The position numbers and the translations under genes are program-made. Of a DNA stretch of 64,000 nt, positions 3,506 through 61,564 are shown one piece after another. The first letter of the stretch is position 1. Each line of letters opens with the position of its first letter. Under the pieces are notes generated by a model. It had not been told where the DNA came from. It did not search any database and saw only the letters and a program-made list of their open reading frames with translations. The stretch covers positions 226,180 through 290,179 of IMG/VR virus record IMGVR_UViG_3300008261_000001. The stretch is one strand, 5' to 3'.

Positions 3506-3555
3506 ATTCATTACTCCAAGTTAGGGCATATCCTAACTGGAGTATAAAAAGATTA

Positions 3556-3840
3556 TCAGTAAGTGTGATCCCAAGATAGCCTAGCCTTACCTCGGAGCTT
3601 CTTAACAGCCCTCTCCGCTCTCATGGCTTCAGATCTGTTTGCATAGGTGCAATAGACACACATAAGCACCCACGGACGATACTTAGCTGTGTACTTAGCC
3701 CCACCAGCGATTTCTCCGTTGTGTTGCCTCAGTCGCCTCTCCACATTCGTCGTGCAACCCACATAATAAAAACCCTCTGCTGGCTTACCCTTCGCTGTGG
3801 TTCTCGGCATCTGACTTTGGATCACATAGACATACCACAT
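3556..3840 (-). CDS. GIY-YIG nuclease (Slx1/UPF0213-like)
   Basis: WYVYV...YYVGCTTNVERRLRQHNG..GGAKYT..RPW..SEAMRAE. Confidence 0.9.
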   Translation of the reverse strand: MWYVYVIQSQMPRTTAKGKPAEGFYYVGCTTNVERRLRQHNGEIAGGAKYTAKYRPWVLMCVYCTYANRSEAMRAERAVKKLRGKARLSWDHTY

Positions 3841-3892
3841 AGCATTCCTCCTATAATGGATAAGTAGATAGGACACCTATCCATTATAGAGA

Positions 3893-4498
3893 CTATCTGT
3901 GAAGCTGTCTGAGATATAGGTCGGCTATTTTTTGTGATGGACTCATGGGCTGTGTGGATCCAACCCTTCTTAGACTCGCCATGATTTGTCTGCCGTCTGC
4001 GTCTACCTCACGCTCAATCTTGAGAGCAGGTCTTCTGACTAAGTAGTTGGGCCACTTCTCAAACCACTTGGCGTAGAACTCGTCTTCCGCCACCTCACGA
4101 GTTGTCTTATCGGGGTTTGGGATATTGGGGTCTGCCACATGGACTATGTAGTTGCCCTTCTCTCCCGTCACATCGAAGATGAGGCTTGCATGGCTCCACT
4201 CTCGCCCCTCAGGGTTCCAAGCGATGAGGACTGGGTGTCCAGCGTCTGTCCACTCTTTGACTTGAGTGAGCGTAGCGGGAGTTGTGAGCGTTGCTCTACA
4301 ACCGAAGTACTGAGCACACGCTAGGACTTCTTCCCATCGAGCCCCTTGCATGGGTTTTGCACCGATGACCGAGTTTACTTCGTCTTCGGTGCATTTCACT
4401 CCTACTGCATTTAGTGCCATACAGGTGGAGGTGGCGACACAAGAGAACTGAGTTCTTTGGCGGATAGGACTTACATCTGCTTTGGCTAATCTTCTCAT
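3893..4498 (-). CDS. C39-like cysteine peptidase
   Basis: Q..QFSC, HAS, VADPN catalytic Cys/His/Asp arrangement. Confidence 0.8.
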   Translation of the reverse strand: MRRLAKADVSPIRQRTQFSCVATSTCMALNAVGVKCTEDEVNSVIGAKPMQGARWEEVLACAQYFGCRATLTTPATLTQVKEWTDAGHPVLIAWNPEGREWSHASLIFDVTGEKGNYIVHVADPNIPNPDKTTREVAEDEFYAKWFEKWPNYLVRRPALKIEREVDADGRQIMASLRRVGSTQPMSPSQKIADLYLRQLHR

Positions 4499-4562
4499 GC
4501 TAGTAGTCTCCTACTTGGACTTATGCTTATCCAATAGGTGATGTATAGAGACTCTAGTAGAT

Positions 4563-4991
4563 TTATCCAATCACTACGCAGTATCCAGAGCTTGGGTACT
4601 GCTTCTTTAAGGATTTCCAGACCCTATCCGCTTGCTCGGAGGTGGAGCCTCTAACGCTACATTTTTCTGGTATAATAACGAACGGCTTTCCAATCTCTTT
4701 CAGCCATCCTTTTATGAGTTGATTGTAGATTTCTGATCCAATGCCTTTTCCGTGATATTCTTTATTTAGGCTCACCACATTTACTTCGAGTATCCGTATG
4801 TCTTCTCCGTCCATGACTTTTGGATACTCGTAGCTAATGTCGATGAGGTCATCGGAGCAGGCGTAGGTGTGGACTACCTCCAACATGGATATGGAGTTTC
4901 CATAAGCCCTAGCAAGACCTATAGACTCACCATCGTCTTTCACCTCTACAAACACATTAGTTGGTGTTGTGGATATGGAGTAGGTGATCAT
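4563..4991 (-). CDS. GNAT-like acetyltransferase
   Basis: LNKEYHGKGIGSEIY acetyl-CoA motif A; ADRVWKSL. Confidence 0.65.
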   Translation of the reverse strand: MITYSISTTPTNVFVEVKDDGESIGLARAYGNSISMLEVVHTYACSDDLIDISYEYPKVMDGEDIRILEVNVVSLNKEYHGKGIGSEIYNQLIKGWLKEIGKPFVIIPEKCSVRGSTSEQADRVWKSLKKQYPSSGYCVVIG

Positions 4992-5660
4992 TTACTCTTC
5001 TTCTGTAGTGGTAGCGGTCTTCTTACCCCCTTTTGCAGAAGTCGAAGCACTAGATGAAGGGCTAGACTTGGTTGAGTACTTTAGCTCCATCTCCACAGCG
5101 TAGAGCTTCTTCTCTAAGTTCGACAGATCGGTGTCTACCTTGCTTTGAAGAGCGTCTGTTTTGCTCTGCACAGCGTCTAGCTTTTTGGATAAGCCATCTT
5201 GCTGTGTGGAGAGGGTGTCGAGCTGTTTTGACGCATTATTGGATAGTGTCTCGATCTCGCCTTTAAGAGTTCCGTAGGTCGCTTGAGCGATATCCATTTT
5301 CTCTAGATACTTTTTGCCCAAGAAGCCGACCACAAGGACAATGGCAAGCCACACATTGTCTCCAGCTAGGCGAACTACTTGTACAAGGTCTAGATCTCCG
5401 CCTTGTGTGTTCTGTTGAACCATTGGCTGTTGAACCATTGGCTGTTGTTGAGGGACACTTACAGGCTGATAAGTCTGTGGGGTGACAGCCACCACAGGTA
5501 CTTCTACGGGCTCTGTATCGCCAACAGAAGGTGCTTCCTCCTTAGAGGCATGGAGGAACTTGCACTCGGACAAGTCCGCCACCTTTGTCTTTCCGTCTAT
5601 GACCCAAAGGTTGCCCTCACGAGTGATGACGGGGTTTTTGGTTTTGATTACGCAAGTCAT
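4992..5660 (-). CDS. Membrane-anchored coiled-coil protein (paralogue of 9208..9873), possible lysis accessory
   Basis: Cys-bounded N-terminal domain, P/Q linker, one TM, coiled coil; overlaps the endolysin stop. Confidence 0.6.
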   Translation of the reverse strand: MTCVIKTKNPVITREGNLWVIDGKTKVADLSECKFLHASKEEAPSVGDTEPVEVPVVAVTPQTYQPVSVPQQQPMVQQPMVQQNTQGGDLDLVQVVRLAGDNVWLAIVLVVGFLGKKYLEKMDIAQATYGTLKGEIETLSNNASKQLDTLSTQQDGLSKKLDAVQSKTDALQSKVDTDLSNLEKKLYAVEMELKYSTKSSPSSSASTSAKGGKKTATTTEEE

Positions 5661-6100
5661 TTAGCCGCCCCCGATCTCTCGTCCCACCTTGCACCCTGCT
5701 TGTGTCCTGTAGCCTCACTTCTGACATCGTAGTGACAGAAATCGTCATAGACACCCAAGCCCCCATTGTACACCTTGCCCTCTTTGATGAGCTTGGTGAT
5801 GAGGGTGTGTACTTGTGTGGAGGTCATACCCTTGATTTTGATATCAGCGGCGGCGGCTTGTAGGTGGAGGGACTTGTCTTTCCCACCCACTGCCGCGTTG
5901 CGGGCGGCAGAACGATAACCACTTATGATGGTTATAGGTGCGTTAGCCGCTTCTCGGATAACCTGTAGGTTTTCCAATAGAAGGGTCGCGTTAGCCATAA
6001 ACTCAGGCGGGATTACATCGTAGAACTCAAGCTCTGAGTACTTGAAGTTCTTAGTGCAGGAAATATTTGTCTTTTGATCTTGAGAGAGGGGTGACGACAT
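5657..6100 (-). CDS. Peptidase M15A (Zn D-Ala-D-Ala peptidase family), putative endolysin
   Basis: ISGYRS..N..VGG..SLH...AADI, GLGVY..FCHYD. Confidence 0.9.
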   Translation of the reverse strand: MSSPLSQDQKTNISCTKNFKYSELEFYDVIPPEFMANATLLLENLQVIREAANAPITIISGYRSAARNAAVGGKDKSLHLQAAAADIKIKGMTSTQVHTLITKLIKEGKVYNGGLGVYDDFCHYDVRSEATGHKQGARWDERSGAAK

Positions 6101-6147
6101 GACTTACACTCCTATTGGGTTGTGTAAGTCCCCCCTATCATAAAAGG

Positions 6148-6549
6148 TTAATGATAAATATGTCCGAAGTCTGGGCAGTCACCACGGATGTCGAAGAACT
6201 CAGCTTTGGGGTTTTCGTTCTTTTCGAAGTCGATGAGGTCGAACTGATAAGACGAGACATTGTCTGACCCCTCGTTTTTGTAAATAGTAACGAGGACAAC
6301 CTCAGTGTTGTCCTCTTTGATTAAGATAGCCACCATCACGAAGCCTCCCTTCTCTAACAGAAGGTGTCTAGTGTAGTCCCCCCAACAGCAGATATCGGCA
6401 TGGACTTCCTCTGGAGCTTCGAGCCGTACTAGACCTTGAGAACCACCGAGTTTGAACATATACGGAGGCATATCGGATAGTTTTGGTGATTCTGGGCTGA
6501 CGAGTATCCCTCGAACTGCTTTTAAGATTTCCGCATTTGATGGGAGCAT
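6148..6549 (-). CDS. Hypothetical protein
   Basis: 133-aa ORF in the same orientation as its neighbours. Confidence 0.55.
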   Translation of the reverse strand: MLPSNAEILKAVRGILVSPESPKLSDMPPYMFKLGGSQGLVRLEAPEEVHADICCWGDYTRHLLLEKGGFVMVAILIKEDNTEVVLVTIYKNEGSDNVSSYQFDLIDFEKNENPKAEFFDIRGDCPDFGHIYH

Positions 6550-6622
6550 ATAACCAACTTTCTATTAAGAGCAACGACAGCAATATTACCCATTATAGCT
6601 ATCTAACGAGGATAAACCCGAG

Positions 6623-6655
6623 AAAAAGAAAAAGGGCTGATTTCTCAGCCCTTTT
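6623..6655 (-). terminator. Intrinsic (potentially bidirectional) terminator after tRNA-Lys
   Basis: aaaagggctga-tttc-tcagccctttt stem with T-runs on both strands. Confidence 0.8.
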
Positions 6656-6656
6656 A

Positions 6657-6729
6657 TGGGTCCTCTGGGGCTCGAACCCAGAACTAACGGATTAAAAGTC
6701 CGCTACTCTACCGATTGAGTTAAGAACCC
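6657..6729 (-). tRNA. tRNA-Lys(UUU), CCA not encoded
   Basis: GGGTTCT..AGGACCC acceptor stem, GCGGA-CTTTTAA-TCCGT anticodon arm, GTTCGAG T-loop. Confidence 0.95.
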
Positions 6730-6738
6730 TTGTTGTAG

Positions 6739-6768
6739 CCCTTATACCACATAAATCAAACCTAGCAA
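6739..6768 (-). promoter_or_regulatory. Sigma70-like promoter for tRNA-Lys
   Basis: TTGCTA...TGGTATAAGGG; the same TGGTATAAGGG lies upstream of tRNA-Thr (~7176-7186). Confidence 0.55.
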
Positions 6769-6777
6769 AAAAAATAG

Positions 6778-7091
6778 TCCAACCCCTCGCCAACTCCCGA
6801 AGGTTGACTGAGGGGTTGTGGGGTGGAGCGACTTCCCTGTCTATCTGAGTCCACATAACGCCCCTGTGTCGCCATACTGCTTCCCTTATCGTCTCCCCCT
6901 ATAGGTTGGGTTCAGAACCTCCCAACCTATAGGGCTTATCTAGCTTGCTTAGACACATTAAACACCTAGAGTCAGGATCTAGGTGCTTGGGGCTAGACAG
7001 ATCGATAAAGATATACATTTAGGTGTAAGCCCCTAAATGACGCATACCATCACCGCTTACTGCGTTTAAGGTGGCTTCTAGACCCCTTAAA
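6778..7091 (-). ncRNA. Unidentified highly structured RNA between the tRNAs
   Basis: At least six stems (one perfect 14 bp), cUUCGg tetraloop, crossing long-range pairings, G-U pairs favouring the minus strand, no ORF. Confidence 0.65.
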
Positions 7092-7092
7092 G

Positions 7093-7165
7093 TGCCACCT
7101 ACAGGATTTGAACCTGTGACATCCTGTTTACAAGACAGGTGCTCTACCAACTGAGCTAAGGGGGC
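7093..7165 (-). tRNA. tRNA-Thr(UGU), CCA not encoded, C4-U69 mismatch
   Basis: AGCTCAGTTGGTAGAGC D-arm, CCTGT-CTTGTAA-ACAGG anticodon arm, GTTCAAA T-loop. Confidence 0.93.
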
Positions 7166-7203
7166 GTGTGCTTACCCTTATACCAAACCCCTCCCCCTCA
7201 AAC

Positions 7204-7596: not shown

Positions 7597-7684
7597 AGCG
7601 ACTCCTTTTATGTTTAGGTTGTAGGTTTTATTACCATAATAAACCTTTTATGTTTTTTCAGCCTAAACAATCGGAGAGAAAAAG

Positions 7685-8053
7685 ATGAAGTACTTATATC
7701 ACTACGAAGCTGAGGTGTTATCCGTTTACGATGGGGACACCTGTACCCTACAGATTTGCTGTGGGTTCGATATGTACACAAGGGTGACTTTTAGACTCAC
7801 AGGCATAGACACCGCTGAGATGAAGTCCAAAGACCCCTTAAAGAAAGAGGCAGCTCTACAAGCTAGAGACCACCTCAGAAGTCGTATCCTCGGCAAGAAG
7901 GTCATCGTCAACACTAGAGAGCGAGAGAAATACGGAAGGTGGCTTGGATACATTTGGGCAGACGAGGGACAAGATGAACTAGGGGAGTCCATCAACGACG
8001 AGATGATTCGTCTCGGTCATGCCAAGCCCTACGATGGTGGTAAGAAAGAATAA
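7685..8053 (+). CDS. Thermonuclease (SNase-like)
   Basis: VYDGDT, RLTGIDTAE, EKYGRWLG, GHAKPYDGG. Confidence 0.92.
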   Translation: MKYLYHYEAEVLSVYDGDTCTLQICCGFDMYTRVTFRLTGIDTAEMKSKDPLKKEAALQARDHLRSRILGKKVIVNTREREKYGRWLGYIWADEGQDELGESINDEMIRLGHAKPYDGGKKE

Positions 8054-8059
8054 ACTGCT

Positions 8060-8716: not shown

Positions 8717-8827
8717 GCTGACCTCCTTTGGTTTCTCGTAGTTATTATGGGATTTAGGTGCTTAATAATTTGTTTATATACCCACAAAACATTGTCCAAA
8801 TAACCCCAACAAGAGAGTATATAGAGT

Positions 8828-9211
8828 ATGCCCCTAGTCCATCAGCACATCGTTGTCCGCTCCCATGTCATGAAGCCTCCCATGAGCGAGGAGGAGACGA
8901 AGAACTGGCTCAAAGAGCTTATTTCTAAAATCGACATGAAGATCCTAAACGGTCCTCATGCGACTTATTTAGATAAAGAGGGTAATAGGGGTGTGACGGG
9001 CGTCTGCATTATCGAGACTTCTCACATTGCAATCCATGTGTGGGATGAGGAGTCTCCAGGTCTTATTCAGCTTGATGTGTACTCGTGTAAGGACTTCGAC
9101 AAAGAGGTGGTGTTCAAGCACTTTGAGTGCTTTGAGCCTGTCTCGACCGAGTGGTTCATGCTCGACCGCACCGACAAGTTATCCATTACGGACGACATAC
9201 AGAAGAAATGA
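8828..9211 (+). CDS. speD: S-adenosylmethionine decarboxylase proenzyme
   Basis: GVTGVCIIETSHIAIHVW..QLDVYSC (pyruvoyl-forming Ser, catalytic Cys). Confidence 0.88.
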   Translation: MPLVHQHIVVRSHVMKPPMSEEETKNWLKELISKIDMKILNGPHATYLDKEGNRGVTGVCIIETSHIAIHVWDEESPGLIQLDVYSCKDFDKEVVFKHFECFEPVSTEWFMLDRTDKLSITDDIQKK

Positions 9212-12608: not shown

Positions 12609-12676
12609 AATCCCTTATCTATTTATGATGACACCCATGTAGAGAAAACACACTCTTCGTGGAGTGACATCATATT

Positions 12677-23000: not shown

Positions 23001-24368
23001 CACAATGGTACTTTGTACCTTTACCAAAATGGATACTCTTTATCCGCCACCAAGATAGACGATGCCTTCTCTCTCGCAGACTTCTCTACTGGCAGTAGCG
23101 GTAGCTTCTACATAGGCACAGACAAAGCTCTAACATCAAACTACTTCTTTAATGGATACCTATCCAACTTTAGGTTGAGCGTGGGTATAGCGAGGCATAC
23201 AACAGCGGACGCTCCATTTACACCCCCCACGAGTGTTTTCACCACGGATGTCTACACTAAGCTCTTGCTTACTGCGGATAGCCTAAGCGATCTTGGTACA
23301 GATACAAGTGGTTCATCTAATACTATGACTTTATCCAATGTAGAGTGGGAGAGTTTCTCAAAATCCTACGCGGATAAGTCTCTGAGTGTGGCGGTGCAGA
23401 CGGGATCTTCTGTTTACGGTGCTTCTCAGTTCTTTGTCTATAGCTCTAACGATTACTACGCTAGACAAGCGAGGGGAAATAACTCGTACCCAACTCTTGT
23501 ATCGAGCTTGCCTAGATATAAAGAGCTACCCACGAACGCTTTGGCTTACGAGGGCAACTATAAAGGGGCATATGAGCCTGCTTTGAGTGCTGGGTACTCC
23601 AATACCACACCCACCCAACCCGACTTGGTATTTAAGGCATTAGCGACTAGCACTAGAAACAATGTGGTCGAGGAATACAACTCTCCCTCTCAACCCACAG
23701 AGTACAAAATCTTCTCTCGGTTGAATAACGATGCGAGTCCTACTCCAGAGTTCAACATCGCCTTCCGATACAAAAATAACACATGGGGTAGCTATTACAA
23801 TCTGTTCCCCTCCACAGGTGCCACTAACATCAGACGCAACTACCTACACACGCTAAGAGTAAACAGCGATGGCACGACCACATTTACACAAGACACCACA
23901 GGACAGACGGCACTTTATCCTTATTCGACAACCGTGAGGCTCTACGCTTATTTTAAGAACTTGGACAATGGCTTGGGGGCGAGTGCCACACCACAGTCCA
24001 CCGTGTTACTAAGGACTGACCCCTCGTTAGGTTCATTAACAGGGCAAGTGGCTTCTGTTCCTAGTGAGTACTCTTTTACAGGTGGTTTAATACCCAAGAC
24101 TTTGATTACAAACACGAATAATGTGTCTCAAATGTCTTGGCAGGTTGTTACAGGTACTAAGTATAGGTTGTACCTCGACAAAGCCACAGGAGTAGATTTA
24201 ATCCTTGCGTTTAGAGCGTACACCTACACAGCAGGTGCGACCGATTACAACACGCTGTATGACGCGAACAACCCCCCCAACTACAAGTCGTTCTCTAACG
24301 CTGTGTGTCAGCAAAACCTCTATCTTCAAGTGCTTGAAGATGGCTCAGTTCTTATCACTCAATCATAA
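17013..24368 (+). CDS. Giant baseplate/tail-fibre protein: tail-I-like N-terminus, ~20-aa repeat shaft, two LamG domains
   Basis: RGSTLESIK and IKPAH motifs; LxDSV repeats; F.IEW, W.H.A, F.GY..N LamG signatures. Confidence 0.75.
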   Translation: MSVYPYDPRFQKDPLGATTKSSSRRLLEDILSERIVSSLARSTASNYITESYGSNHRIFYEGVASLLSEILVDSVDNIDDSELSQLRAEFLSTRLLYSIFPPTNNSVPETDTIEELHKILILALESLFRGSTLESIKQALDSVYSEKVGLELEGYIVRLTSSILSITTIEDNHQHFVFTQSKGLGSTTYPIGLKWGDDLHSHLIVDGVVQPYTDAEGNTHTHEVSLGLIPNVVRLQENLRKVLSVIKPAHIKTGTISSVLEENGNLGVSEDEMILSLGGLYQDDMRRVRLGTWEDVLFGYASNKTLRVYRTNITKPNSLLVKPNENSSTGQRTRVLSISSSVPANGEYTSWSFPLDSASEALFRSTGVDTLSVDNGFITGKDSSDPSSEQIPAYFTDGSLVLLNGVAYYIELFLTEPPKYKVSAQVITTDTRLNATNSVVEITNLSSPWKVRQDIRYETYTFTYYPPAGSANLWFSLPPLNVRFFYKGIALNPTNSFSISINGVAVPSSVLKFYSHYDNNFYLLNAGDYSAVLNPLDRVTITYPYDEDEVYRFTSLNDPRLVLNATRKVGQVTTTNGRKSSYLAPSAPPYYIRRKNYVLNKVVPISPYTTEYRDATYGIGSTSTTNTITQKINSSFVLNRVSPSSKVASVSAPATKVITTKDGVISFVQLGFKPDYILSIFDGGGTEYIGALSKGYLRVAGITTPTTLTISALSTSPLTDSGTWYEGSKYLEGQAPLKKTEHSVSGLTESSADEIMANPLGLAEPQVGGGFKDAVRSVIARSSSTSIGTRGEPAFYEDRPTSFAVGGYLSEVHTETQYLDEVLYGDYSLYLLGPISTTELTTLTTIPTYLFFHYSFLSTFGGNGYYFSIYRISSDGIKYYQTLYPLADSGAFECFEEHPAPPNGAPLAYRWKDDGSGSGFSLNYPNGSFPTYEADPNGYFNHIPNQTYYVEVYMEQNGGIDELYFFSSGTNAPYTLGSSWTTSSETYALDDPMDMGFGKTYTFQVTFATNPGEVTSWLQIADPAPSATKSSEEVGATIEIIADVLSPSEPLYGERVSFIPNGGLFTPLGLPYSLDPVPAILDSVSIAETRNIQEFLPTTADTLSLSYLLSPCSITETTQAINDSFTYTYRVALADSLSVNDGSTQATQLILEDSLLLLDEIDHKLGLNFSDTSVVVDTIQASLDISLTLEDSVFVATNTVSTTYGFSPSISVESVPLPSDTLTTNLTLSRGVQDSLSEILDSVVLNLSGYDFSDVVQPADDQVAVLYAYAPTAVQDTLGGILDDVLFKYSVLEGDSVSPILDSVLTQVSEYLLLDSVTISDDVTLNYAYTSQALLDAVLALQDEVTHRVSSFNLTDSLTNILDEVGVLETRSISLLDSLSLTDSVSTSYVYGNINITESVASILDSVSTSYLFSALTLSDSVSAQVDAVQAYIKSLHISDQVGVTDEGSARISSFGVTDDLSITDVVGITVPVISVSDSTSLSDVGQAHISSIKTLDTLSWGDTIETSLSLTSLLVEDLVVLNDTVLTTYALNGLDLVDTVGFSDSDVEITPIVYVSDSVSAPTDETDTVQLFEPLEKSDSVVFSDGVLTSYVLLPSSVSESVPDVEDSTDLSLSLTSTLNEGAVSVLDTGLARISSKFLSDTLDMTDDVSTTYEESLRLVDGSIAFAGTDTSYLVGADISAFDTGTNAFRIEWWMYLDSTGAGNNPVVFSRNLRGTSDRFRVKLLNKTGLQLSLSTGSALVTNSFGSVANDEWVHIAIVGRSSVVRAYVNGVQLGSSWSTTYNITNASTAAFYIGNETTPIADTAFKGYITNLRYLYQISGASDLTTRTGTFSIPTAPLPSVSLNVFRLVATDSSTAFTGTGTTLTNTSSVSWSSSVPTITDPMSSLSLNGVISFPYANGYLSRLSDSDFNLGSGDFTIEWHQYLTTTELATSYSHRAYIFDLDYTAAIKQISVYYDSALEKIVLFYRVNGSTSYTIGYQVNNIRDRWSHFALSRHNGTLYLYQNGYSLSATKIDDAFSLADFSTGSSGSFYIGTDKALTSNYFFNGYLSNFRLSVGIARHTTADAPFTPPTSVFTTDVYTKLLLTADSLSDLGTDTSGSSNTMTLSNVEWESFSKSYADKSLSVAVQTGSSVYGASQFFVYSSNDYYARQARGNNSYPTLVSSLPRYKELPTNALAYEGNYKGAYEPALSAGYSNTTPTQPDLVFKALATSTRNNVVEEYNSPSQPTEYKIFSRLNNDASPTPEFNIAFRYKNNTWGSYYNLFPSTGATNIRRNYLHTLRVNSDGTTTFTQDTTGQTALYPYSTTVRLYAYFKNLDNGLGASATPQSTVLLRTDPSLGSLTGQVASVPSEYSFTGGLIPKTLITNTNNVSQMSWQVVTGTKYRLYLDKATGVDLILAFRAYTYTAGATDYNTLYDANNPPNYKSFSNAVCQQNLYLQVLEDGSVLITQS
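20240..21980 (+). repeat. Degenerate tandem protein repeat (LxD[S/T]V...D)
   Basis: Periodic ILDSV/LEDS/VSDS units about every 18-23 aa. Confidence 0.7.
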
Positions 24369-24421
24369 ACCCTTTATGATTGAGTGCATACAAAGGCAAC
24401 CCTCTAAATGGAGTATCCGAT

Positions 24422-25093
24422 ATGATGATCATCACAGGTAAAGTACACGCTATCGTCCGCAACACAGCAGGCGAGGTTATCCAAGAAGTCTTTGGACCTA
24501 ACGCTGTTGTGGAGATGTCGAATAATATCCTCATGGACTCGATTTTCCCCAAGCTCGGGACCAACGCATCCCCCACGGCTATTCCCAATAGACCCGAGGG
24601 TACGAACATGACGGATAACACGACCTTCCCTACAGGTGGCAACTACATCGGTGCAGGTGGAGCGAGCCAAACTATCCAAGAAGCGGCTCGTAATCACATT
24701 GCCTATATTGCTGTGGGCGATAACGAAGGCTCTAACGATACGGGTGTGGCGAATCAAAACCAAAAGGTCACGATGGTAGACACGAGTTTCGATCCTACGG
24801 ACGCTGTGACCGTGTATGCGAGGAGCGTGGACTCAGTCACTTTCCCTGCATACAACCAAGTCAAGTTCACCACAACTTACTCCACCGCACAAGGCAACCT
24901 CGCAGGTGGTATCTCTGAAATAGGTCTTTGGACAGCGGGCAATAACGCGGACGCAAATGGGTTCATCACCTCTGAAGTCCCCACAACCTCAACCAACATG
25001 AGATTGTTTGCCCGTAAGATCCTCGCTAATGCGATCACCAAGACCGACGATGGTACACTTGAGATTAACTACACTCTAACCTTTGGGGCGTAA
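24422..25093 (+). CDS. Tail/baseplate structural protein (tail-collar-like)
   Basis: N.VV, YIAVG, ISEIGL, LFARK, ITK..D.TL.I.Y pattern; GGAG before ATG 24422. Confidence 0.65.
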   Translation: MMIITGKVHAIVRNTAGEVIQEVFGPNAVVEMSNNILMDSIFPKLGTNASPTAIPNRPEGTNMTDNTTFPTGGNYIGAGGASQTIQEAARNHIAYIAVGDNEGSNDTGVANQNQKVTMVDTSFDPTDAVTVYARSVDSVTFPAYNQVKFTTTYSTAQGNLAGGISEIGLWTAGNNADANGFITSEVPTTSTNMRLFARKILANAITKTDDGTLEINYTLTFGA

Positions 25094-25185
25094 AGGTTAA
25101 TGGGTGGGGTTTAAACACGCTAGGTGTGTGGGGTTGTAGTTATTTAATACTCCATAACCTAGCCCCATAGGTCATGGAGGACAAT

Positions 25186-40857: not shown

Positions 40858-40910
40858 AATGTGGAGTCTCGGTAAGGTATAAAATACATACCTTCTTTAG
40901 AGAGCCCCAC

Positions 40911-41216
40911 ATGACAAAATGGATAACACCCCTAGCTAGTAGTAATCAGATTTACGATGTTGTCTCTTCCATGTTCTCACAGCCCTATGAGAAATCTAGT
41001 CTAAGTCGCTTATCCGTCTTGGGCTTCTCTATCAGTAGAACAGATAGGGGCGTTATCTTAATGAGTAGGGGATTATCCACCTACATAAATGAGGTGACCG
41101 AAAATGAAAACGCCTTGTATGTTGGCTCAGACGGCAGAACATACAAGGCGTTAGAAGAGGCGATTGTGGGGCTATTCGAGCCTCATCTGAGGGCTGAGGT
41201 GTCTAGGAGGCTTTAG
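40911..41216 (+). CDS. Hypothetical protein
   Basis: 101-aa ORF with upstream GGTATAAAA. Confidence 0.55.
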   Translation: MTKWITPLASSNQIYDVVSSMFSQPYEKSSLSRLSVLGFSISRTDRGVILMSRGLSTYINEVTENENALYVGSDGRTYKALEEAIVGLFEPHLRAEVSRRL

Positions 41217-41669: not shown

Positions 41670-41696
41670 ATCCCAACCCTCGAAGCTCTATATTAG
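41670..41696 (+). promoter_or_regulatory. ATCCCAAC-N14-ATTAG promoter-like element, copy 1
   Basis: Identical boxes and spacing at 41670, 45886 and 52353. Confidence 0.7.
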
Positions 41697-41730
41697 AGGG
41701 GGCAACCAACAGACACACAAAGGATGTTGC

Positions 41731-45885: not shown

Positions 45886-45912
45886 ATCCCAACTCGTGAT
45901 GTTCTCTATTAG
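45886..45912 (+). promoter_or_regulatory. ATCCCAAC-N14-ATTAG promoter-like element, copy 2
   Basis: Exact box match and spacing. Confidence 0.7.
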
Positions 45913-45947
45913 GGGGGTGTACACACCCACACCACAGAGAGAACACC

Positions 45948-46523
45948 ATGACCAAGCTCGACATCCTCAACATCATCATCAAGCTCCTTGTCCTCGACAA
46001 CGCAGTCGGGCTCGACAACCCTAAGGTCAAGACGCACCTGGACGCGGTCGCCACCGCCATCCATGCCGAGGCTGGTGAGGTTCCCGCCTCACGCCTCATC
46101 AGCCTCGCTTATAACGAGTCTCGATTTGGATATAAAGAGATCAAGCTCGACTCTTACCCCACCACCTCGTGGGGGGCTTGTGGCATCTATCAGCAGGTGG
46201 CGAAGTTCTCCACCATCCCCACCACCTGCCACAAGCTGGGGACAGATGTTCGTCACGCCACGAAGGTGGCTGTGGCTTACCTCAAGTACATGAAGGGTCG
46301 GTGGAAGGTCACGACCTCCACCGAGAAGATGGACGACCTCATGTGCCACTACTACAGCGGAAACACCTGTGATCGAGAGGCTAAGGCTTACGCCAAGAGG
46401 CATAAGAAAATCCGCGAGAAGGCGAGCGAGCTTCTAGCTTCTAAGGCTAAGGGGCTGAAGAAGCCTAAGTCTAAGGGGCTGATGGTAGCTTCTCGTAAGG
46501 GGCTTCCCCCTCGCACCATCTAA
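45948..46523 (+). CDS. SLT-like lytic transglycosylase with N-terminal hydrophobic segment
   Basis: LISLAYNESR, GACGIYQ, YLK, HYYSG. Confidence 0.65.
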   Translation: MTKLDILNIIIKLLVLDNAVGLDNPKVKTHLDAVATAIHAEAGEVPASRLISLAYNESRFGYKEIKLDSYPTTSWGACGIYQQVAKFSTIPTTCHKLGTDVRHATKVAVAYLKYMKGRWKVTTSTEKMDDLMCHYYSGNTCDREAKAYAKRHKKIREKASELLASKAKGLKKPKSKGLMVASRKGLPPRTI

Positions 46524-52705: not shown

Positions 52706-52795
52706 ATGTGCAATCTAACCCTATGGGCGGTGCTCTCTGTAATATATGGCTGGTATGTAGTGGAGGCGTACAAGTCGTACAAGGGAAAGCACTAG
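52706..52795 (+). CDS. Putative 29-aa membrane peptide
   Basis: AGGAG RBS; MCNLTLWAVLSVIYGWYVVEAYKSYKGKH. Confidence 0.45.
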   Translation: MCNLTLWAVLSVIYGWYVVEAYKSYKGKH

Positions 52796-52829
52796 GAGGG
52801 GTGAGCTAGTAGGAGGGGTGAGCTAGTAG
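52793..52829 (+). repeat. 17-bp tandem duplication
   Basis: taggaggggtgagctag twice, then tag. Confidence 0.85.
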
Positions 52830-52871
52830 ATTGTTTATGAGCCAAACACCTACAAGAAAGGTGCGTGGCTC

Positions 52872-53258
52872 ATGAAGAAATCTTCTGCTCAACTGAAAGA
52901 GATTTTATCCAATATGGACGAGGATATTATTTCCAAGTCGAGGGACTTGGTGTCCTCGGTGGTGGGTTCGTTCGAGGAACAGCTTTTAAAAAGCCCTTTA
53001 ACTTTTAGGGTTGGGGACTACGAGGTTTTGGTGGAGGCGAAGAGCGGAAGTCTTAGTGGTGGGGATTTGGATATTTATCTGTCGTGTAGCTGTGGTTATT
53101 GGCAGTATCAGGGACCAGAATATCACGCTAAACAAAATGGATACTTGTTTGGTAAAGCGAGGGGTACGGCTGAGAAGCCTACGAGTAAAGACCCCAACGG
53201 TACACATAAGCTATGTAAGCACTCTTATGTTGTACTTAAAGACTATTTTGGAGCTTGA
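52872..53258 (+). CDS. SWIM-type zinc-finger protein
   Basis: CSC..W...CKH. Confidence 0.7.
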   Translation: MKKSSAQLKEILSNMDEDIISKSRDLVSSVVGSFEEQLLKSPLTFRVGDYEVLVEAKSGSLSGGDLDIYLSCSCGYWQYQGPEYHAKQNGYLFGKARGTAEKPTSKDPNGTHKLCKHSYVVLKDYFGA

Positions 53259-54351: not shown

Positions 54352-54371
54352 TAATGGATAAGTGGTGTTAA

Positions 54372-54387
54372 TAATAGTTCGTTTATA
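54372..54387 (+). promoter_or_regulatory. Candidate late promoter TAATAG-N3-GTTTATA
   Basis: Near-identical copies at 61079, 8763 and 52338 (minus strand). Confidence 0.6.
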
Positions 54388-54435
54388 ACAAGGCGTATTG
54401 TTAACGGATAACGATAACCCTCTAGGAGAGACAAT

Positions 54436-55143
54436 ATGCCATACATCATCGCAAGGCGTTCTGAGATTCAAAATGGCTCGGTGCAGATCACGGACTTGTT
54501 CCCTAATCAGAGCCAAGCCAACCCCATGATAGACCCTGCACCTCAAGGTCCTTTCTATGTAAGAGTTCCCAATATTGGGGATACAGGTAAGTATCGTCCT
54601 GTGTTGGTGACTTTAGGTGATGGCTCGATTGTGTTTGGTCGTGAGTCTCATGGCTTAACATCTTACATCATCAAAAACATAGACGCATCTCCAGCGGGCG
54701 GTGACACCACCGTAACCGTCACACAAGCAGAAGAAATCGCTTCTGCCCTTTTAACAAGGGCGAGGGGTGGTTTGGCACTCGCTGAGGCGAATATCAACGC
54801 GGTCTTGGTGGCGACTCTAGGTGCAGGAGCCGCGATAGATGCAGGTGACTCTACTGCGAGCGTAGATGTTATCCTTCAGATCCTTTCTGGTGAGTCTTAT
54901 GTTGTGCCTTATGGCTACACCGTTCAGACAGCCGGTGGTGACCATGTGGTTGTCATTTCGGATAGTAGCCTCGGCTCTACCGTTAGAAGGCTCGTGGAGA
55001 GGGATACCTCGTGGCAAGTATCTTTCAATGAGGGTTGCCTTGCAGGTTTAGTGGCGGCTCGTCCTAATGGCTTTGCAGGCAATACAGCCACCACCCCCCT
55101 CGTTGCTGTCTATAACGCTGACGGCACCATCTACAACGGATAA
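54436..55143 (+). CDS. Putative virion protein, paralogue 1 of 3
   Basis: QITDLFPNQSQANP..DPAPQGP ... VYNADG. Confidence 0.6.
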   Translation: MPYIIARRSEIQNGSVQITDLFPNQSQANPMIDPAPQGPFYVRVPNIGDTGKYRPVLVTLGDGSIVFGRESHGLTSYIIKNIDASPAGGDTTVTVTQAEEIASALLTRARGGLALAEANINAVLVATLGAGAAIDAGDSTASVDVILQILSGESYVVPYGYTVQTAGGDHVVVISDSSLGSTVRRLVERDTSWQVSFNEGCLAGLVAARPNGFAGNTATTPLVAVYNADGTIYNG

Positions 55144-55154
55144 GGAGTCTAACC

Positions 55155-55850: not shown

Positions 55851-55863
55851 GGACTAAGACACC

Positions 55864-56490: not shown

Positions 56491-56506
56491 GATTGGATAG
56501 GATAGA

Positions 56507-56731: not shown

Positions 56732-56735
56732 GTTT

Positions 56736-56990
56736 ATGGACTTCGAGCCTGCGGAGCTTTACAAGACTTCGGACTTGTATTTTGCCGCGTTCTTGAAGTC
56801 TGCGGGCTTAGACCTACTTACCTCTGAGGTATTGGATAAGAAGGTCGTTTTTGTCTTTGAGAAAATAGATTTAATAAAAGACCTCAAACGCGAGTACTTC
56901 AACCGCACCGCTCGCGTATCTGCTTTGACCTTTGTGGACGAAATAAGAAATCTTAAATCTCTCACCCACATGACTAGAGAAGGTTCTTAA
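56736..56990 (+). CDS. Small phage protein (DUF5659-like)
   Basis: YKTSDLYFAAFL...VVFVF...LKS pattern. Confidence 0.55.
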   Translation: MDFEPAELYKTSDLYFAAFLKSAGLDLLTSEVLDKKVVFVFEKIDLIKDLKREYFNRTARVSALTFVDEIRNLKSLTHMTREGS

Positions 56991-57040
56991 AGGCTTTATA
57001 CCCCTTGTATTGGATAAAACCTAGAGGGGGTTTAAGCAAT

Positions 57041-57400
57041 ATGACACCAGCAGTTATTCATGTAGAAGAGGGCAAGTCTGTTCCATGTTCGGTGGGGTGG
57101 ACGGACTCTATTGGTCGTCCATTAGAGGTGGAGGATGTTCAAGCGTCACTTTACACCTATAACGGAAATGTAAGGAGCGTATTGGTCGAGCCAGCGTTGA
57201 TGATACAGACGGATCAGACGCATAGGTACATACTGAGGTTTGTGATACCTGAGGGGTACTTGGGCAAGTACTTGTATGTGGAGTTTACGGCTAATCTCGT
57301 ATCGGATAACTCAGCTTTGTCCTCTGATTTAATCCTTTATGTGATAGACCCATTATCCGATGGGGGTATAACCCCTAGCCCCATCGTAAGGGTTTTGTAA
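57041..57400 (+). CDS. Ig-like putative structural protein
   Basis: Beta-strand pattern; GAGGGG RBS before ATG 57041. Confidence 0.5.
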   Translation: MTPAVIHVEEGKSVPCSVGWTDSIGRPLEVEDVQASLYTYNGNVRSVLVEPALMIQTDQTHRYILRFVIPEGYLGKYLYVEFTANLVSDNSALSSDLILYVIDPLSDGGITPSPIVRVL

Positions 57401-57467
57401 ATCGTTTATATTTAGCTATATAAGCCTATCTCTACAAAGATAGTCCTCTACACAAAGGATAATAAAA

Positions 57468-57779
57468 ATGAGCGTAAGAAAAGAACTGATTCGTATTGCC
57501 AACGAGAACCCTCACCTTCGTTCAGTGATCATCCCTGCGTTAAAGAAGAACGATCAGAGTGAGCTTGTTAGGGTTGCTCAGAGTATCTTGGCTGAAGAAG
57601 AGGCTGAAGCTCCTACATCGGCACCTGCTCCTGTAGAGCCAGAGGCTAAGACGGCATCTCAAGCTAAGACCGCTAAGGCTGATTTGGATGCGAATCTTCG
57701 CAAGCAGATTATCCGTTTGGCTTCTGAGCGTCCTGATCTTAGGGAAGTGCTTGTCCCTTTACTCAAGGCAACCAAGTGA
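57468..57779 (+). CDS. Small protein with duplicated RKxxIRxA.E.PxLR helix; possible scaffold or internal head protein
   Basis: Two copies of the motif separated by an acidic/Ala-Pro linker. Confidence 0.55.
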   Translation: MSVRKELIRIANENPHLRSVIIPALKKNDQSELVRVAQSILAEEEAEAPTSAPAPVEPEAKTASQAKTAKADLDANLRKQIIRLASERPDLREVLVPLLKATK

Positions 57780-58100: not shown

Positions 58101-58163
58101 ATTTTATCCATATTTCGTTTATATCTTTTACCTTTTTCAAACAGAAAGAGGTAGGTGATATAA

Positions 58164-58532
58164 ATGGGAAACTTTTGGATTAGAGAAAATGGTGTGAACA
58201 CGCTCAAGGGTGTAGAGGGCGAAGAGGGTAACTTTCCAATCTTGCCAGCCATTCTCATCGTCACCATGCTAAATGAAAATCAGCAGGCGAGAGACGACTT
58301 TGAGAAGTTGTTTCCGATGATGTCCCCCACAGAGCAAGAGCGTTTAACCGAGTTATTTTCTTTTACACGACCGCCCTTAGAGTATCCGCAGGTGGTTGAG
58401 GATAAGTTCCAAAAGGGTTTAAATAACCTAGTAGTAAGGAGTGTCACAAACCTACCGAGGAACATAAACAGGTCTGAAAATAAGTACTCGGGTACGGTCG
58501 TTAGGCTCTCAAGCCCTCCGAGGAGTAGATAG
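58164..58532 (+). CDS. Hypothetical protein
   Basis: GAGGTAGGTG RBS inside a hairpin. Confidence 0.55.
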   Translation: MGNFWIRENGVNTLKGVEGEEGNFPILPAILIVTMLNENQQARDDFEKLFPMMSPTEQERLTELFSFTRPPLEYPQVVEDKFQKGLNNLVVRSVTNLPRNINRSENKYSGTVVRLSSPPRSR

Positions 58533-58535
58533 TTT

Positions 58536-58889: not shown

Positions 58890-58893
58890 AGCC

Positions 58894-60261: not shown

Positions 60262-60275
60262 TTAGGAGTAATGTA

Positions 60276-60485
60276 ATGAACCGCCATATGTTCTTATCCA
60301 TTTTATTTGTCTGTTCTGTGGTGTTTGTGTACTACGCCACATCAACATCTCTAGCCCACGATCTAACACAGCCTTGTACTGATCTTCTCGAAAACAAGTT
60401 TGAGCAAGAAAAGCCAAAAGAGATAGACTATGGGCTTGAGGACTCGGATATGTACTCAGACGAAGATTTTAGGTGTGATTGTTAA
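60276..60485 (+). CDS. Small secreted or membrane protein
   Basis: N-terminal hydrophobic segment; AGGAG RBS. Confidence 0.5.
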   Translation: MNRHMFLSILFVCSVVFVYYATSTSLAHDLTQPCTDLLENKFEQEKPKEIDYGLEDSDMYSDEDFRCDC

Positions 60486-60487
60486 TC

Positions 60488-61081
60488 ATGAGTTCAGATA
60501 AAAATCCATTTGGGGGCGGTAACGCTGTCTCCCTTTACATACCCATCACCGACATCGAACAAGAGTTCTTAGCTCGTTTAACTGAGAGCAAAGACATAAT
60601 GCTTATTGTTCACGAGTGGGGCTACATAGAGTCACCGAGGATTACCTTTGGTGATAAGAACCTCCATGTACACTTCAAGATGTTGTTTGACCGACCTGAC
60701 CCACCGATGGGTGTGAGAGCGTTCGACCTAGAACTTAAGACGAGAAGTGGACTTTCTCTTTTTCGTCAAAAGATGAGCGTAGAGTACGATGGAGAACCGC
60801 TCTTGGTAGGTGCTGGTTTAGAGTTCGACATGGTGTGGGATATAGCCATCCGATACATAGACCCAAAAGTCATTAAAGCCCTTATGCCTCATACGATTGG
60901 GATGACATCTAGGCTCCAAGACACCGCCACACACGATATGACCGTAACAGGTAATATGAAGCTCACCCAAGACCTTGTTCGTAAGGCACACGCTCTAAGA
61001 GAGACAGAGCTACTACTGCCTTCCTTGATCGAAAAGGCAAAGCAAGAGGCGAGGGTGAAGGCAAGTAAGAAGAAGTCTTAA
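60488..61081 (+). CDS. Hypothetical protein
   Basis: ~200-aa ORF; AGGTG RBS. Confidence 0.6.
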   Translation: MSSDKNPFGGGNAVSLYIPITDIEQEFLARLTESKDIMLIVHEWGYIESPRITFGDKNLHVHFKMLFDRPDPPMGVRAFDLELKTRSGLSLFRQKMSVEYDGEPLLVGAGLEFDMVWDIAIRYIDPKVIKALMPHTIGMTSRLQDTATHDMTVTGNMKLTQDLVRKAHALRETELLLPSLIEKAKQEARVKASKKKS

Positions 61082-61129
61082 TAGTGCGTTTATAACCCCC
61101 TTAAGGCACAACTTTAAGGAGGGTATTAA

Positions 61130-61564
61130 ATGCTCTTAAATCGCATAGCCTCACTACATAGGCGTATCTTAGCACTAGAAGAGGTAGCTCCTAGTGCAGA
61201 AGAGCACTTCTTCGATAACCCACAATATAAAAGCGTGAGGGAGTTCGGAAACTCTGAGGCTATATCCAATAAGCCCGATGTGGCTACCAAAGCCGTCAAA
61301 GAGTCCGATGCTCCAGATAGAAGCGTCACTGAGGCTAAAAGGGAAAGCCTTCAAGCACCTCCTCCTCCTGAGGAAATAATAGAAAAGCCAGGTGGTAAAG
61401 ACTTCTCTACGCTCACTCAGCTTCTGATCGAAACCGAAGAGCCTGTCAAGGGTGTTCCTGAGGGGTATGAAGACGCACCAAAAGCACAACCTGTCCCCCC
61501 TCACAGCGAGGAAGTCAAAAAACAGGCTGTTAAACAAGCCATGCGGAAACTCGGATACCGCTAA
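61130..61564 (+). CDS. Acidic/Pro-rich protein with RIAS leader; possible internal head protein
   Basis: NRIASLHRRILALE; late-motif promoter and RBS hairpin upstream. Confidence 0.55.
   Translation: MLLNRIASLHRRILALEEVAPSAEEHFFDNPQYKSVREFGNSEAISNKPDVATKAVKESDAPDRSVTEAKRESLQAPPPPEEIIEKPGGKDFSTLTQLLIETEEPVKGVPEGYEDAPKAQPVPPHSEEVKKQAVKQAMRKLGYR

What the first reader, a model, noticed from the sequence alone, without database searches (positions are those of the whole stretch)
3512..61130. Systematic promoter-overlapping hairpins that bury the ribosome-binding site
Seen: at about 10 genes the TTTATR box of the candidate late promoter, or the bases just after it, forms the 5' arm of a stem whose 3' arm is the SD and/or ATG. 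Examples: 3512-3544 (-) tactcca/tggagta plus gttagg/cctaac; 4500-4557 (-); 8773-8825; 12624-12674 tatgatg/catcata with GGAG paired; 25150-25179 ctccat/atggag; 52837-52873 atgagcca/tggctcat plus cacct/aggtg; 56993-57037; 58118-58164 tttatatc/gatataaa plus tacctttttc/gaaagaggta; 61095-61124. Related cases occur at the endolysin (6101-6130) and 40859-40912. Known: T4 uses this trick at a few late genes (e, soc), where read-through mRNA is silent and the late start truncates the stem. Inference: here it is a general design, so a gene is translated only when transcribed from its own promoter.
Basis: partly seen in the sequence, partly recalled or inferred. Interest (0 to 1): 0.8.

Follow-up and report, generated by a model that had tools for sequence, protein, structure and literature searches.

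The report
Promoter-anchored hairpins that hide ribosome sites
In this uncultured freshwater jumbo phage and its relatives, many genes carry a conserved promoter-like box whose own and following bases pair with the gene's ribosome-binding site, but only when another gene reads into them from upstream, which fits a phage T4-style trick used genome-wide so that a gene is translated only from its own transcript.

Summary
A 17-nt promoter-like motif (TTAATAG-like block, then TTTAT) sits 32-69 nt upstream of at least 14 window genes. Six to seven of their leaders fold far better than shuffles (z -3.6 to -6.2), with the SD/AUG in the 3' arm. The partner of the ribosome site is anchored to the box (box -2 to +15), whatever the leader length. 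Orthologous leaders in related phages keep box and pairing but change arm sequences; in 14 clades of the baseplate leader, cognate arms give -22 kcal/mol against -9 for non-cognate.

The new, discriminating result: among box genes in 20 loci, buried ribosome sites occur only where the upstream gene is co-oriented (54% against 0% of ortholog-group states, Fisher 2e-4). Four gene families found in both arrangements all follow this rule. Removing box +0 to +15 returns ribosome-site opening energy to background.

It is not proven: no transcription start is mapped, "late" is unverified, and an RNase III-type processing site remains possible. The design covers about half of co-oriented promoter-bearing genes, not all. 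I rate it a new variant of a known kind.

The parts
12611..12627 (+). Promoter-like motif (upstream block plus TTTATG box) before baseplate gene 12677-13717
   Evidence: Position-weight-matrix hit. The box is kept upstream of the orthologous gene in 14 clades.
12624..12674 (+). Leader hairpin; 5' arm starts inside the box, 3' arm holds GGAG and ends 2 nt before ATG
   Evidence: -22.6 kcal/mol, z -6.2. Ribosome-site opening energy is 14 kcal/mol in read-through RNA and 5 after removing box +0..+12. Covaries in 14 clades.
3507..3559 (-). Motif (3543-3559) and leader hairpin (3507-3548) of gene 2390-3505
   Evidence: -18.2 kcal/mol, z -5.2. Opening energy falls from 15.8 to 3.5 on truncation at box +12.
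6101..6155 (-). Motif (6139-6155) and hairpin (6101-6130) before the Peptidase_M15 endolysin gene 5657-6100
   Evidence: z -2.5; Pfam hit. The 5' arm starts at box +14, so truncation up to +15 does not open it.
52823..52874 (+). Motif and hairpin before gene 52872-53258; the box itself is paired and the AUG lies in the stem
   Evidence: -20.1 kcal/mol, z -6.2. Opening energy falls from 23 to 4 at box +15. The phage B ortholog keeps the box with different arm sequences.
56984..57036 (+). Motif and hairpin before gene 57041-57400
   Evidence: -13.8 kcal/mol, z -1.9, or -2.5 in the -50..+3 frame. Opening energy 15.4. A population variant adds one C after 57000, giving C5 opposite the G5 of the 3' arm.
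58107..58164 (+). Motif and hairpin before gene 58164-58532; TTTATATC pairs with GATATAAA next to the ATG
   Evidence: -19.9 kcal/mol, z -6.1. Opening energy falls from 21.8 to 1.8 at box +15.
61078..61130 (+). Motif and hairpin before gene 61130-61564; ACCCCC after the box pairs with GGAGGGT
   Evidence: -15.8 kcal/mol, z -3.6. Opening energy falls from 15.1 to 8.9.
1442..1496 (-). Motif (1480-1496) and moderate hairpin (1442-1478) before gene 541-1434, at a divergent junction
   Evidence: -13.5 kcal/mol, z -1.5. Opening energy 9.5.
4500..4557 (-). Hairpin before gene 3893-4498, with box variant TCTATA inside the 5' arm
   Evidence: -20.1 kcal/mol, z -2.1. Opening energy 9.4.
25150..25179 (+). 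Weak to moderate hairpin (CTCCAT/ATGGAG) after a TTTAAT variant, before gene 25174-25842
   Evidence: z -1.3 to -1.9. Opening energy 15.5.
40859..40912 (+). Hairpin burying the start of gene 40911-41216; no sense-strand box
   Evidence: z -3.4 to -3.9. Opening energy falls from 11.9 to 2.3 when the 5' arm is cut off.
45894..45951 (+). Hairpin before gene 45948-46523, with box variant TCTATT in the 5' arm, at a divergent junction (an exception to the orientation rule)
   Evidence: -27 kcal/mol, z -4.5. Opening energy falls from 11.9 to 2.1.
7636..7687 (+). Motif with unstructured leader before SNase-like gene 7685-8053 (divergent junction): natural control
   Evidence: z 0.05. The phage B ortholog follows a co-oriented ORF and has a -26 kcal/mol hairpin with opening energy 22.7.
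8762..8830 (+). Motif with near-unstructured leader before AdoMet decarboxylase gene 8828-9211 (divergent junction)
   Evidence: z -1.4. Opening energy 5.6, against 10.2 in the co-oriented phage B ortholog.
24362..24424 (+). Motif with open leader before gene 24422-25093 (co-oriented, no hairpin)
   Evidence: Matrix score 20.1. Opening energy 5.4.
54371..54438 (+). Motif with moderate leader structure before gene 54436-55143
   Evidence: Matrix score 21.5. Opening energy 7.4-8.7.
57394..57470 (+). Motif with open ribosome site before gene 57468-57779 (co-oriented, no burying hairpin)
   Evidence: Matrix score 20.1. Opening energy 3.8.

Best explanation
A short phage-specific promoter (consensus about TTAATAGTTTnTTTAT) is embedded in the DNA that encodes the 5' strand of a leader hairpin. 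The 3' strand of that hairpin is the gene's Shine-Dalgarno sequence and start codon.

RNA that reads in from a co-oriented upstream gene contains both strands and folds, so its ribosome site is closed at a cost of 14-28 kcal/mol. RNA started at the gene's own promoter begins some 8-10 nt after TTTAT, lacks the 5' strand and is translated. Each such gene is therefore translated only from its own transcript.

Shown here:
- the motif;
- the hairpins;
- their anchoring on the box and on the ribosome site;
- covariation across relatives;
- dependence on the orientation of the upstream gene;
- the computed opening of the ribosome site after truncation.

Inferred, not shown:
- that the motif is a promoter;
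- where transcription starts;
- that read-through RNA exists;
- that translation differs between the two RNA forms.
For: Motif:
- It is enriched in intergenic DNA, orientation-specific, and lies at a fixed range from start codons.
- It is conserved in relatives of 31-48% GC.

Hairpins:
- They fold far better than shuffles and are associated with the box.
- Box genes have ribosome-site opening energy 11.0 against 6.7 kcal/mol for other genes, p 9e-6.

Anchoring:
- The segment box +6..+18 is complementary to its own ribosome site and not to the sites of other genes (permutation p 5e-5).
- Pairing partners of the ribosome site fall between box -2 and box +15, although leader length ranges from 32 to 69 nt.

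Covariation:
- Orthologous leaders in phage B use different arm sequences.
- In 14 clades of the baseplate leader, cognate arms give -22.3 kcal/mol and non-cognate -8.9 (p <=1e-5), with only 28% identity between 5' arms.
- All 9 of 9 consensus pairs show compensatory changes.

Orientation rule:
- Co-oriented box genes have mean opening energy 13.5, and 56% are >=12. Divergent box genes have mean 5.9, and 4% are >=12 (Fisher 1.1e-5).
- After collapsing ortholog groups the figures are 54% against 0% (Fisher 2e-4).
- Genes without a box show no orientation effect.
- Four ortholog groups occur in both arrangements, and all four follow the rule.

Truncation series for 28 strong leaders (kcal/mol): read-through 18.5, box +5 14.9, box +12 8.7, box +15 6.2, which equals background.

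No terminator-like sites lie between the co-oriented genes of 52.8-62.2 kb.

Precedent: T4 genes e, soc, 49 and I-TevI (PMC3014915), and Bacillus subtilis sigma-B internal promoters (PMC8208050).
Against: - No transcription start is known. No public RNA run holds the phage, and the patchy run X25 shows no informative ends.
- If transcription started at the last base of the box, as in phiKZ TATG promoters (PMC4666361), most window hairpins would stay closed, with mean opening energy 9-15 kcal/mol.
- There is no purine peak 12-15 nt after the box start that would mark a start site.
- The promoter proper (-8..+5) is not significantly complementary to its own ribosome site across all sites (p 0.18).
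- The endolysin hairpin and a few relatives (L009:484, L031, L036) remain partly closed after truncation at +15.
- Neighbouring genes that both carry the same box would be transcribed at the same time, so temporal insulation as in T4 does not obviously apply.
- One strong hairpin (45894-45951) sits at a divergent junction.
Confidence: 0.55

Rival explanations
1. The hairpins are double-strand-specific RNA processing sites of the RNase III type, as found next to several phage T7 promoters. Cleavage would separate the cistrons of polycistronic RNA, leave a protective hairpin on the upstream piece and free the ribosome site of the downstream gene.
For: - Several stems are 16-25 bp and nearly perfect, within the usual RNase III size range: window 12624-12674 and 58118-58164, and baseplate leaders of L025 and L031 at -30 to -35 kcal/mol.
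- They occur only between co-oriented genes.
- Stems this stable would need some way of being removed.
- The T7 promoter/RNase III pairing is recalled from general knowledge and was not checked here.
Against: - This does not explain why the 5' arm is anchored on the box and the 3' arm on the SD/AUG over leader lengths of 32-69 nt.
- It does not explain why all partners of the ribosome site end by box +15.
- Several window stems are short and interrupted (1442-1478, 56995-57036, 61089-61130).
- Host and nuclease are unknown.
Confidence: 0.17
2. The whole hairpin is present in the gene's own transcript because transcription starts at or before the box. It would be a regulated translational operator, opened by a phage-made factor, a helicase, temperature or standby ribosomes.
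For: - Base 6 of the box is a purine in 70% of sites, as expected for a start nucleotide directly after TTTAT, by analogy with phiKZ TATG (PMC4666361).
- One clade of relatives has a conserved loop sequence, GTGAGA followed by YAWNAT, on top of covarying stems. That pattern is typical of a protein-binding operator.
Against: - A gene-intrinsic operator should not depend on the orientation of the upstream gene. Yet the same gene family has the hairpin only when a gene reads into it (4 of 4 families).
- Burial of 20-28 kcal/mol for an essential baseplate gene would need a very strong activator.
- Loop sequences are not conserved in the window phage.
Confidence: 0.12
3. The hairpins serve the upstream gene. 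They would be terminators, insulators or 3'-end protectors of the upstream transcript, and their overlap with the next ribosome site is a by-product of tight spacing.
For: - The orientation dependence fits.
- The upstream stop codon lies only 4-17 nt before the box in most strong cases (gap minus box distance).
- Two relatives (L022, L037) have a U run after the stem.
Against: - No leader hairpin in the window is followed by a T run, and the terminator scan finds none of them. A canonical terminator does exist elsewhere, at 6630-6655.
- In long leaders the stem still spans from box to ribosome site, with inner hairpins filling the gap, instead of forming a compact hairpin.
- A terminator between promoter and gene would also stop the gene's own transcript unless the start lies inside it. 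That case reduces to the main model.
Confidence: 0.07
4. The hairpins are 5'-terminal stabilisers that protect primary transcripts from 5'-end-dependent decay, or devices that couple translation to the upstream gene.
For: - Hairpins begin within a few bases of the box.
- In some cases the upstream stop codon is close enough (4-7 nt) for a terminating ribosome to fray the base of the stem.
Against: - A 5' stabiliser should be present at all promoters, but 0 of 16 divergent box-gene groups have it.
- A stabiliser has no need to include the SD and AUG.
- A terminating ribosome cannot reach the SD-pairing part (box +6 to +15) in most cases.
Confidence: 0.06

Closest known systems
Phage T4 genes e, soc, 49 and I-TevI: inhibitory leader structures with an embedded late promoter (review PMC3014915, section 29)
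   Same: - The SD and/or AUG is sequestered in a helix.
- The promoter lies in the DNA that encodes the 5' strand.
- Longer upstream transcripts are predicted to be silent and short ones open.
- As in T4-type phages, related phages keep the arrangement while sequences differ.
   Different: - T4 uses it at a handful of genes to block early expression of late functions. Here it is at about half of all co-oriented promoter-bearing genes and is conserved across a deep, uncultured phage family.
- The promoter motif (TTAATAG..TTTAT) is unrelated to TATAAATA.
- Neighbouring genes carry the same box, so the role may be insulation from read-through rather than timing.
- Start sites are unmapped here.
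Bacillus subtilis sigma-B internal promoters giving translation-competent short mRNA isoforms (McCormick et al. 2021, PMC8208050)
   Same: - Long isoforms from an upstream promoter fold over the ribosome site.
- An internal promoter excludes the structure and activates translation.
- Several genes of one regulon use it.
   Different: - That is a cellular stress regulon with two different sigma factors and long-range folding.
- Here the leaders are compact (32-69 nt), use one promoter type, and belong to a phage.
- There is no experimental structure or translation data here.
Phage T7 promoter-adjacent RNase III sites (general knowledge, not checked here)
   Same: Hairpins lie between co-oriented genes, close to phage promoters, in polycistronic RNA.
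   Different: T7 sites generally lie upstream of the ribosome site rather than containing it. Cleavage has not been tested here.
phiKZ late promoters, TATG with the G as start site (PMC4666361)
   Same: A short AT-rich conserved element, TAT followed by a purine, in a jumbo phage.
   Different: - Here an extra conserved block lies 4-11 nt upstream, and base 6 is not always a purine (TTTATT and TTTATC occur in relatives).
- No phiKZ-type polymerase genes were seen in the window.
- An ECF-like sigma factor gene is present at 44608-45228.

Membership tests
T4-type promoter-embedded inhibitory leader (e/soc class) | SD and/or AUG base-paired in a stable helix | tested here: met
   Opening energy of -15..+3 is 14-23 kcal/mol at six window genes, against about 7 for other genes.
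T4-type promoter-embedded inhibitory leader (e/soc class) | Promoter lies in the DNA encoding the 5' strand of the helix | tested here: met
   Partners of the ribosome site map to box -2..+15. The cognate-arm test gives p 5e-5. That the box is a promoter is inferred from motif statistics and conservation, not from RNA data.
T4-type promoter-embedded inhibitory leader (e/soc class) | Transcripts from the embedded promoter start inside or after the 5' strand | not testable with these tools
   No RNA run holds the phage. Computation shows only that a start at box +12 to +15 would suffice.
T4-type promoter-embedded inhibitory leader (e/soc class) | Longer transcripts read in from upstream | tested here: met
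   Indirect evidence. Buried sites occur only after co-oriented genes: 54% against 0% of ortholog-group states, Fisher 2e-4, with 4 of 4 families found in both arrangements. No terminators lie between the genes.
T4-type promoter-embedded inhibitory leader (e/soc class) | Long form poorly translated, short form well translated | not testable with these tools
   Needs reporters, toeprinting or ribosome profiling.
Intrinsic terminator | GC-rich stem followed directly by a U run | tested here: not met
   None of the leader hairpins is called by the terminator scan. The stems are followed by the start codon.
5'-terminal mRNA stabiliser stem-loop | Present on primary transcripts irrespective of what lies upstream | tested here: not met
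   Box genes at divergent junctions have open leaders (mean 5.9 kcal/mol, 0 of 16 groups >=12).
RNase III processing site (T7 type) | About two turns of mostly regular helix between cistrons | tested here: inconclusive
   Some stems are 16-25 bp. Others are short and interrupted.
RNase III processing site (T7 type) | Cleavage by RNase III | not testable with these tools
   The host is unknown and there are no RNA end data.
Any described RNA family (Rfam 15) | Match at gathering score | tested here: not met
   Only the two tRNAs match in the window.

The most novel reading that the evidence does not exclude
A widespread, uncultured family of aquatic jumbo myoviruses uses one conserved 17-nt phage-specific promoter. 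Wherever a promoter-bearing gene follows another gene, the promoter region doubles as the anti-ribosome-site strand of a covarying leader hairpin. Read-through RNA is then translationally silent, and each gene's output is set only by its own promoter. This would be a genome-wide 'translational insulation' architecture rather than the few timing switches known from T4.
Probability: 0.5. Interest if true: 0.75.

Novelty: new variant of a known kind. Interest (0 to 1): 0.62.

Why it matters
If correct, this shows that isoform-specific translation is an organising principle of a whole phage genome, kept by compensatory evolution over deep divergence, rather than a curiosity of four T4 genes. It would let a phage pack many co-oriented promoters without terminators and still set each protein's level independently.

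It also has practical uses:
- It gives a sequence-only rule (box, hairpin and co-orientation) that helps to annotate promoters, true start codons and transcription units in uncultured jumbo phages.
- It defines a new conserved promoter motif whose reader (polymerase or sigma factor) is unknown.
- It supplies compact natural parts (32-69 nt) for insulating genes in synthetic operons.

Tried and rejected
- Near-identical search of the phage collection found nothing.
- The closest GenBank record, LR745208.1 (37% amino-acid identity on the baseplate J protein), has 54% GC and no box, so it was dropped.
- RNA evidence was sought three ways:
  - Two run searches and the single read-laying run found only DNA-type contigs and one patchy run of unknown kind. 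There were no start-like ends.
  - Contigs carrying the exact protein 58164-58529 were all metagenomic.
  - Population variants in the leaders were too few for covariation: one change in an internal loop, and one C insertion that improves pairing.
- Reading the upstream block or the box as a sigma-70 -10 element gave no convincing register, and sigma-70-like promoters are depleted.
- An archaeal TATA/BRE reading was considered. It was rejected because of the bacterial-type genes and because a start 25 nt downstream would delete the SD in short leaders.
- The loop motif GTGAGA-YAWNAT was tested as a general promoter. It occurs only in the baseplate leader of one clade.
- The MAFFT alignment of the covarying leaders is imperfect, so a cognate versus non-cognate arm test was used instead.


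Full report
**What the window is.** The window is the last 64 kb of a 290-kb viral contig from lake water, IMGVR_UViG_3300008261_000001.
- It encodes baseplate J and wedge proteins, very large fibre-like proteins, an M15 endolysin, a thymidine kinase, a DnaG-like primase, a type IB topoisomerase-like protein, an ECF-like sigma factor and two tRNAs.
- It is therefore a jumbo myovirus of an unknown bacterial host that uses strong GGAG-type ribosome sites.
- Near-identical DNA is present in many freshwater metagenomes.
- No cultured relative exists in the phage collection.

**The box.** TTTATR is five times denser in intergenic DNA than in genes.
- Fourteen copies lie in sense orientation 38-63 nt before a start codon.
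- They share an upstream block, so the motif is about 17 nt long.
- In 47 non-redundant sites from this phage and its relatives, the consensus is TT-A-A-T-A-R-W-Y-Y-n-TTTAT. The T and A at -7 and -6 are nearly invariant.
- The motif keeps its form in relatives whose GC content ranges from 31% to 48%. This points to a phage-encoded reader.
- That the motif is a promoter is inferred. The timing class is unknown, because it precedes structural, lysis, nucleotide-metabolism and many small genes.

**The hairpins.** Folding from the box to the ATG gives these z-scores against dinucleotide shuffles:
- gene 2390-3505: -5.2
- 12677: -6.2
- 52872: -6.2
- 58164: -6.1
- 61130: -3.6
- endolysin: -2.5
- 57041: -1.9
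- 7685 and 8828: about zero

Box genes as a group differ from the other 51 genes (mean z -2.6 against -0.3, p 5.5e-4). I measured burial as the free energy needed to unpair positions -15 to +3. It is 12.2 kcal/mol for 23 box leaders of this phage and phage B in read-through context, and 7.1 for genes without a box.

**Anchoring.** The segment box +6 to +18 is complementary to its own ribosome site far more than to those of other box genes (permutation p 5e-5). The promoter proper (-8 to +5) is not, over all sites (p 0.18), although six of nine phage B sites rank in the top five of 23. In the base-pair probability matrices, partners of the ribosome site lie between box -2 and box +15 with sharp edges, although the box-to-ATG distance varies from 32 to 69 nt. 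Long leaders bridge the gap with inner hairpins. The selected feature is therefore pairing between the box-proximal bases and the ribosome site, not merely a hairpin somewhere in the spacer.

**Conservation.** Phage B has 65-96% protein identity (loci L009 and L013). It keeps the motif before orthologous genes but uses different arm sequences. A metagenome scan with the baseplate protein gave 34 loci from fresh and sea water, on contigs up to 345 kb.
- In 14 clades the baseplate leader is a 12-25 bp hairpin (-22 to -35 kcal/mol) running from the box to the ATG.
- Cognate arms pair at -22.3 kcal/mol and non-cognate arms at -8.9 (p <=1e-5), while the 5' arms are only 28% identical between clades.
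- All nine consensus pairs in an automatic alignment show compensatory changes.
- No Rfam family matches.

**The discriminating test.** If the hairpin acts on RNA that reads in from upstream, it should be present only where the upstream gene has the same orientation. I called genes in 20 loci (263 genes), scored boxes with a weight matrix and computed burial.
- Box genes after a co-oriented gene: mean 13.5 kcal/mol, 56% at or above 12.
- Box genes at divergent junctions: mean 5.9, 4% at or above 12 (Mann-Whitney 2.6e-6, Fisher 1.1e-5).
- Genes without a box show no orientation effect.
- Counting each ortholog group once per arrangement gives 54% of 24 against 0% of 16 (Fisher 2e-4). With high-scoring boxes only, it is 50% of 18 against 0% of 9.
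- In this phage alone it is 9 of 14 against 0 of 4 (p 0.04).

Four gene families occur in both arrangements, and all four follow the rule:
- The nuclease gene scores 5.5 at the divergent junction in the window, and 22.7 and 12.0 where co-oriented in L009 and L027.
- The AdoMet decarboxylase gene scores 5.6 against 10.2.
- The baseplate gene scores 13.8-27.9 in 13 co-oriented cases and 7.3 in the one divergent case.
- For a tandem pair of roughly 780-residue genes in L050, the first copy (divergent) is open at 6.0 and the second (co-oriented) is closed at 16.9.

This result argues against a plain 5' stabiliser and against a gene-intrinsic operator.

**Where would transcription have to start?** For the 28 strongly buried leaders, cutting the RNA at increasing distances from the first T of the box lowers burial in steps:

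| Cut position | Opening energy (kcal/mol) |
|---|---|
| read-through | 18.5 |
| box +0 | 17.3 |
| box +5 | 14.9 |
| box +9 | 11.1 |
| box +12 | 8.7 |
| box +15 | 6.2 |
| beyond +15 | flat |

A start 8-10 nt after TTTAT would therefore give normal ribosome sites. That is the distance expected if TAT is read like the start of a -10 element. A start at the last base of the box, as in phiKZ TATG promoters (PMC4666361), would leave most sites closed. No start-site signal is visible in the sequence, and no RNA data exist. This step is inference.

**Rivals.**
- An RNase III-type processing site fits the orientation rule and the long perfect stems of some relatives. It does not explain the double anchoring.
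- A terminator or 3' protector is unlikely. The stems lack U runs and are missed by the terminator scan, although a canonical terminator exists at 6630-6655.
- Translational coupling is possible only where the upstream stop codon lies 4-7 nt before the box.
- The endolysin hairpin begins at box +14 and may work differently.

**Comparison with what is known.** The logic is that of T4 genes e, soc, 49 and I-TevI. In T4 the late promoter lies in the DNA for the 5' strand, and long early transcripts are about 100-fold less translated (PMC3014915). It is also the logic of sigma-B internal promoters in Bacillus subtilis (PMC8208050). Four things differ here:
- the scale (about half of co-oriented promoter-bearing genes);
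- the depth of conservation with covariation;
- an unrelated promoter motif;
- the fact that neighbouring genes share the same box, which suggests insulation from read-through rather than timing.

**Verdict.** The feature is a new variant of a known kind. It merits transcript-end mapping and reporter tests.

Noticed in passing
whole window, e.g. 573-581, 13893-13901, 57009-57017; also L009 and L013: The 9-mer ATTGGATAR occurs 55 times on both strands, against 1.2 expected from shuffles. Most copies are inside many different genes. The density is the same in phage B and near zero in more distant relatives. It may be a DNA-level signal (binding, modification or recombination site) of unknown role.
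   Followed up: partly
L022:2477, L023:2017, L031:5946, L033:4547, L036:1456, L037:1360, L039:9971: In one clade of relatives, the apical loop of the baseplate-leader hairpin keeps the sequence GTGAGA followed by YAWNAT (a -10-like hexamer), while the stems covary. It is found only at this gene. It could be an internal promoter in the loop or a protein-binding operator.
   Followed up: partly
window 24358-24384: A perfect 12-bp palindrome with a CCC loop lies around the stop codon of the 2451-residue gene. It contains the box motif on both strands.
   Followed up: no
window 52793-52826: An exact tandem duplication of the 17-mer TAGGAGGGGTGAGCTAG sits just upstream of the box of gene 52872.
   Followed up: no
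window 44608-45228: A 207-residue protein gives weak but consistent matches to ECF-type sigma-70 factors (regions 2 and 4). It is a candidate phage sigma factor, and its promoter class is unknown.
   Followed up: partly
window 47070-48281 and 50725-51945: Two paralogous genes of about 405 residues have weak DNA methyltransferase similarity. Phage B has one copy.
   Followed up: no
window 57000: Some lake populations carry one extra C after 57000. This turns C4 into C5 opposite the G5 run of the 3' arm and so improves the hairpin.
   Followed up: no
window 41690-41705, 45903-45915, 4536-4547(-); L009:440-452: A box variant with TCTAT instead of TTTAT (TCTATTAG, TCTATATTAG, TCTATAC) precedes several genes, sometimes followed by a G run. 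It may be a weaker or second class of the same promoter.
   Followed up: no
window 6630-6655 and 6657-7165: A canonical bidirectional intrinsic terminator lies next to two tRNA genes (Lys-TTT, Thr-TGT). Sigma-70-type promoter-like sites are fewer than in shuffles across 44-64 kb (14 against 26.6).
   Followed up: no
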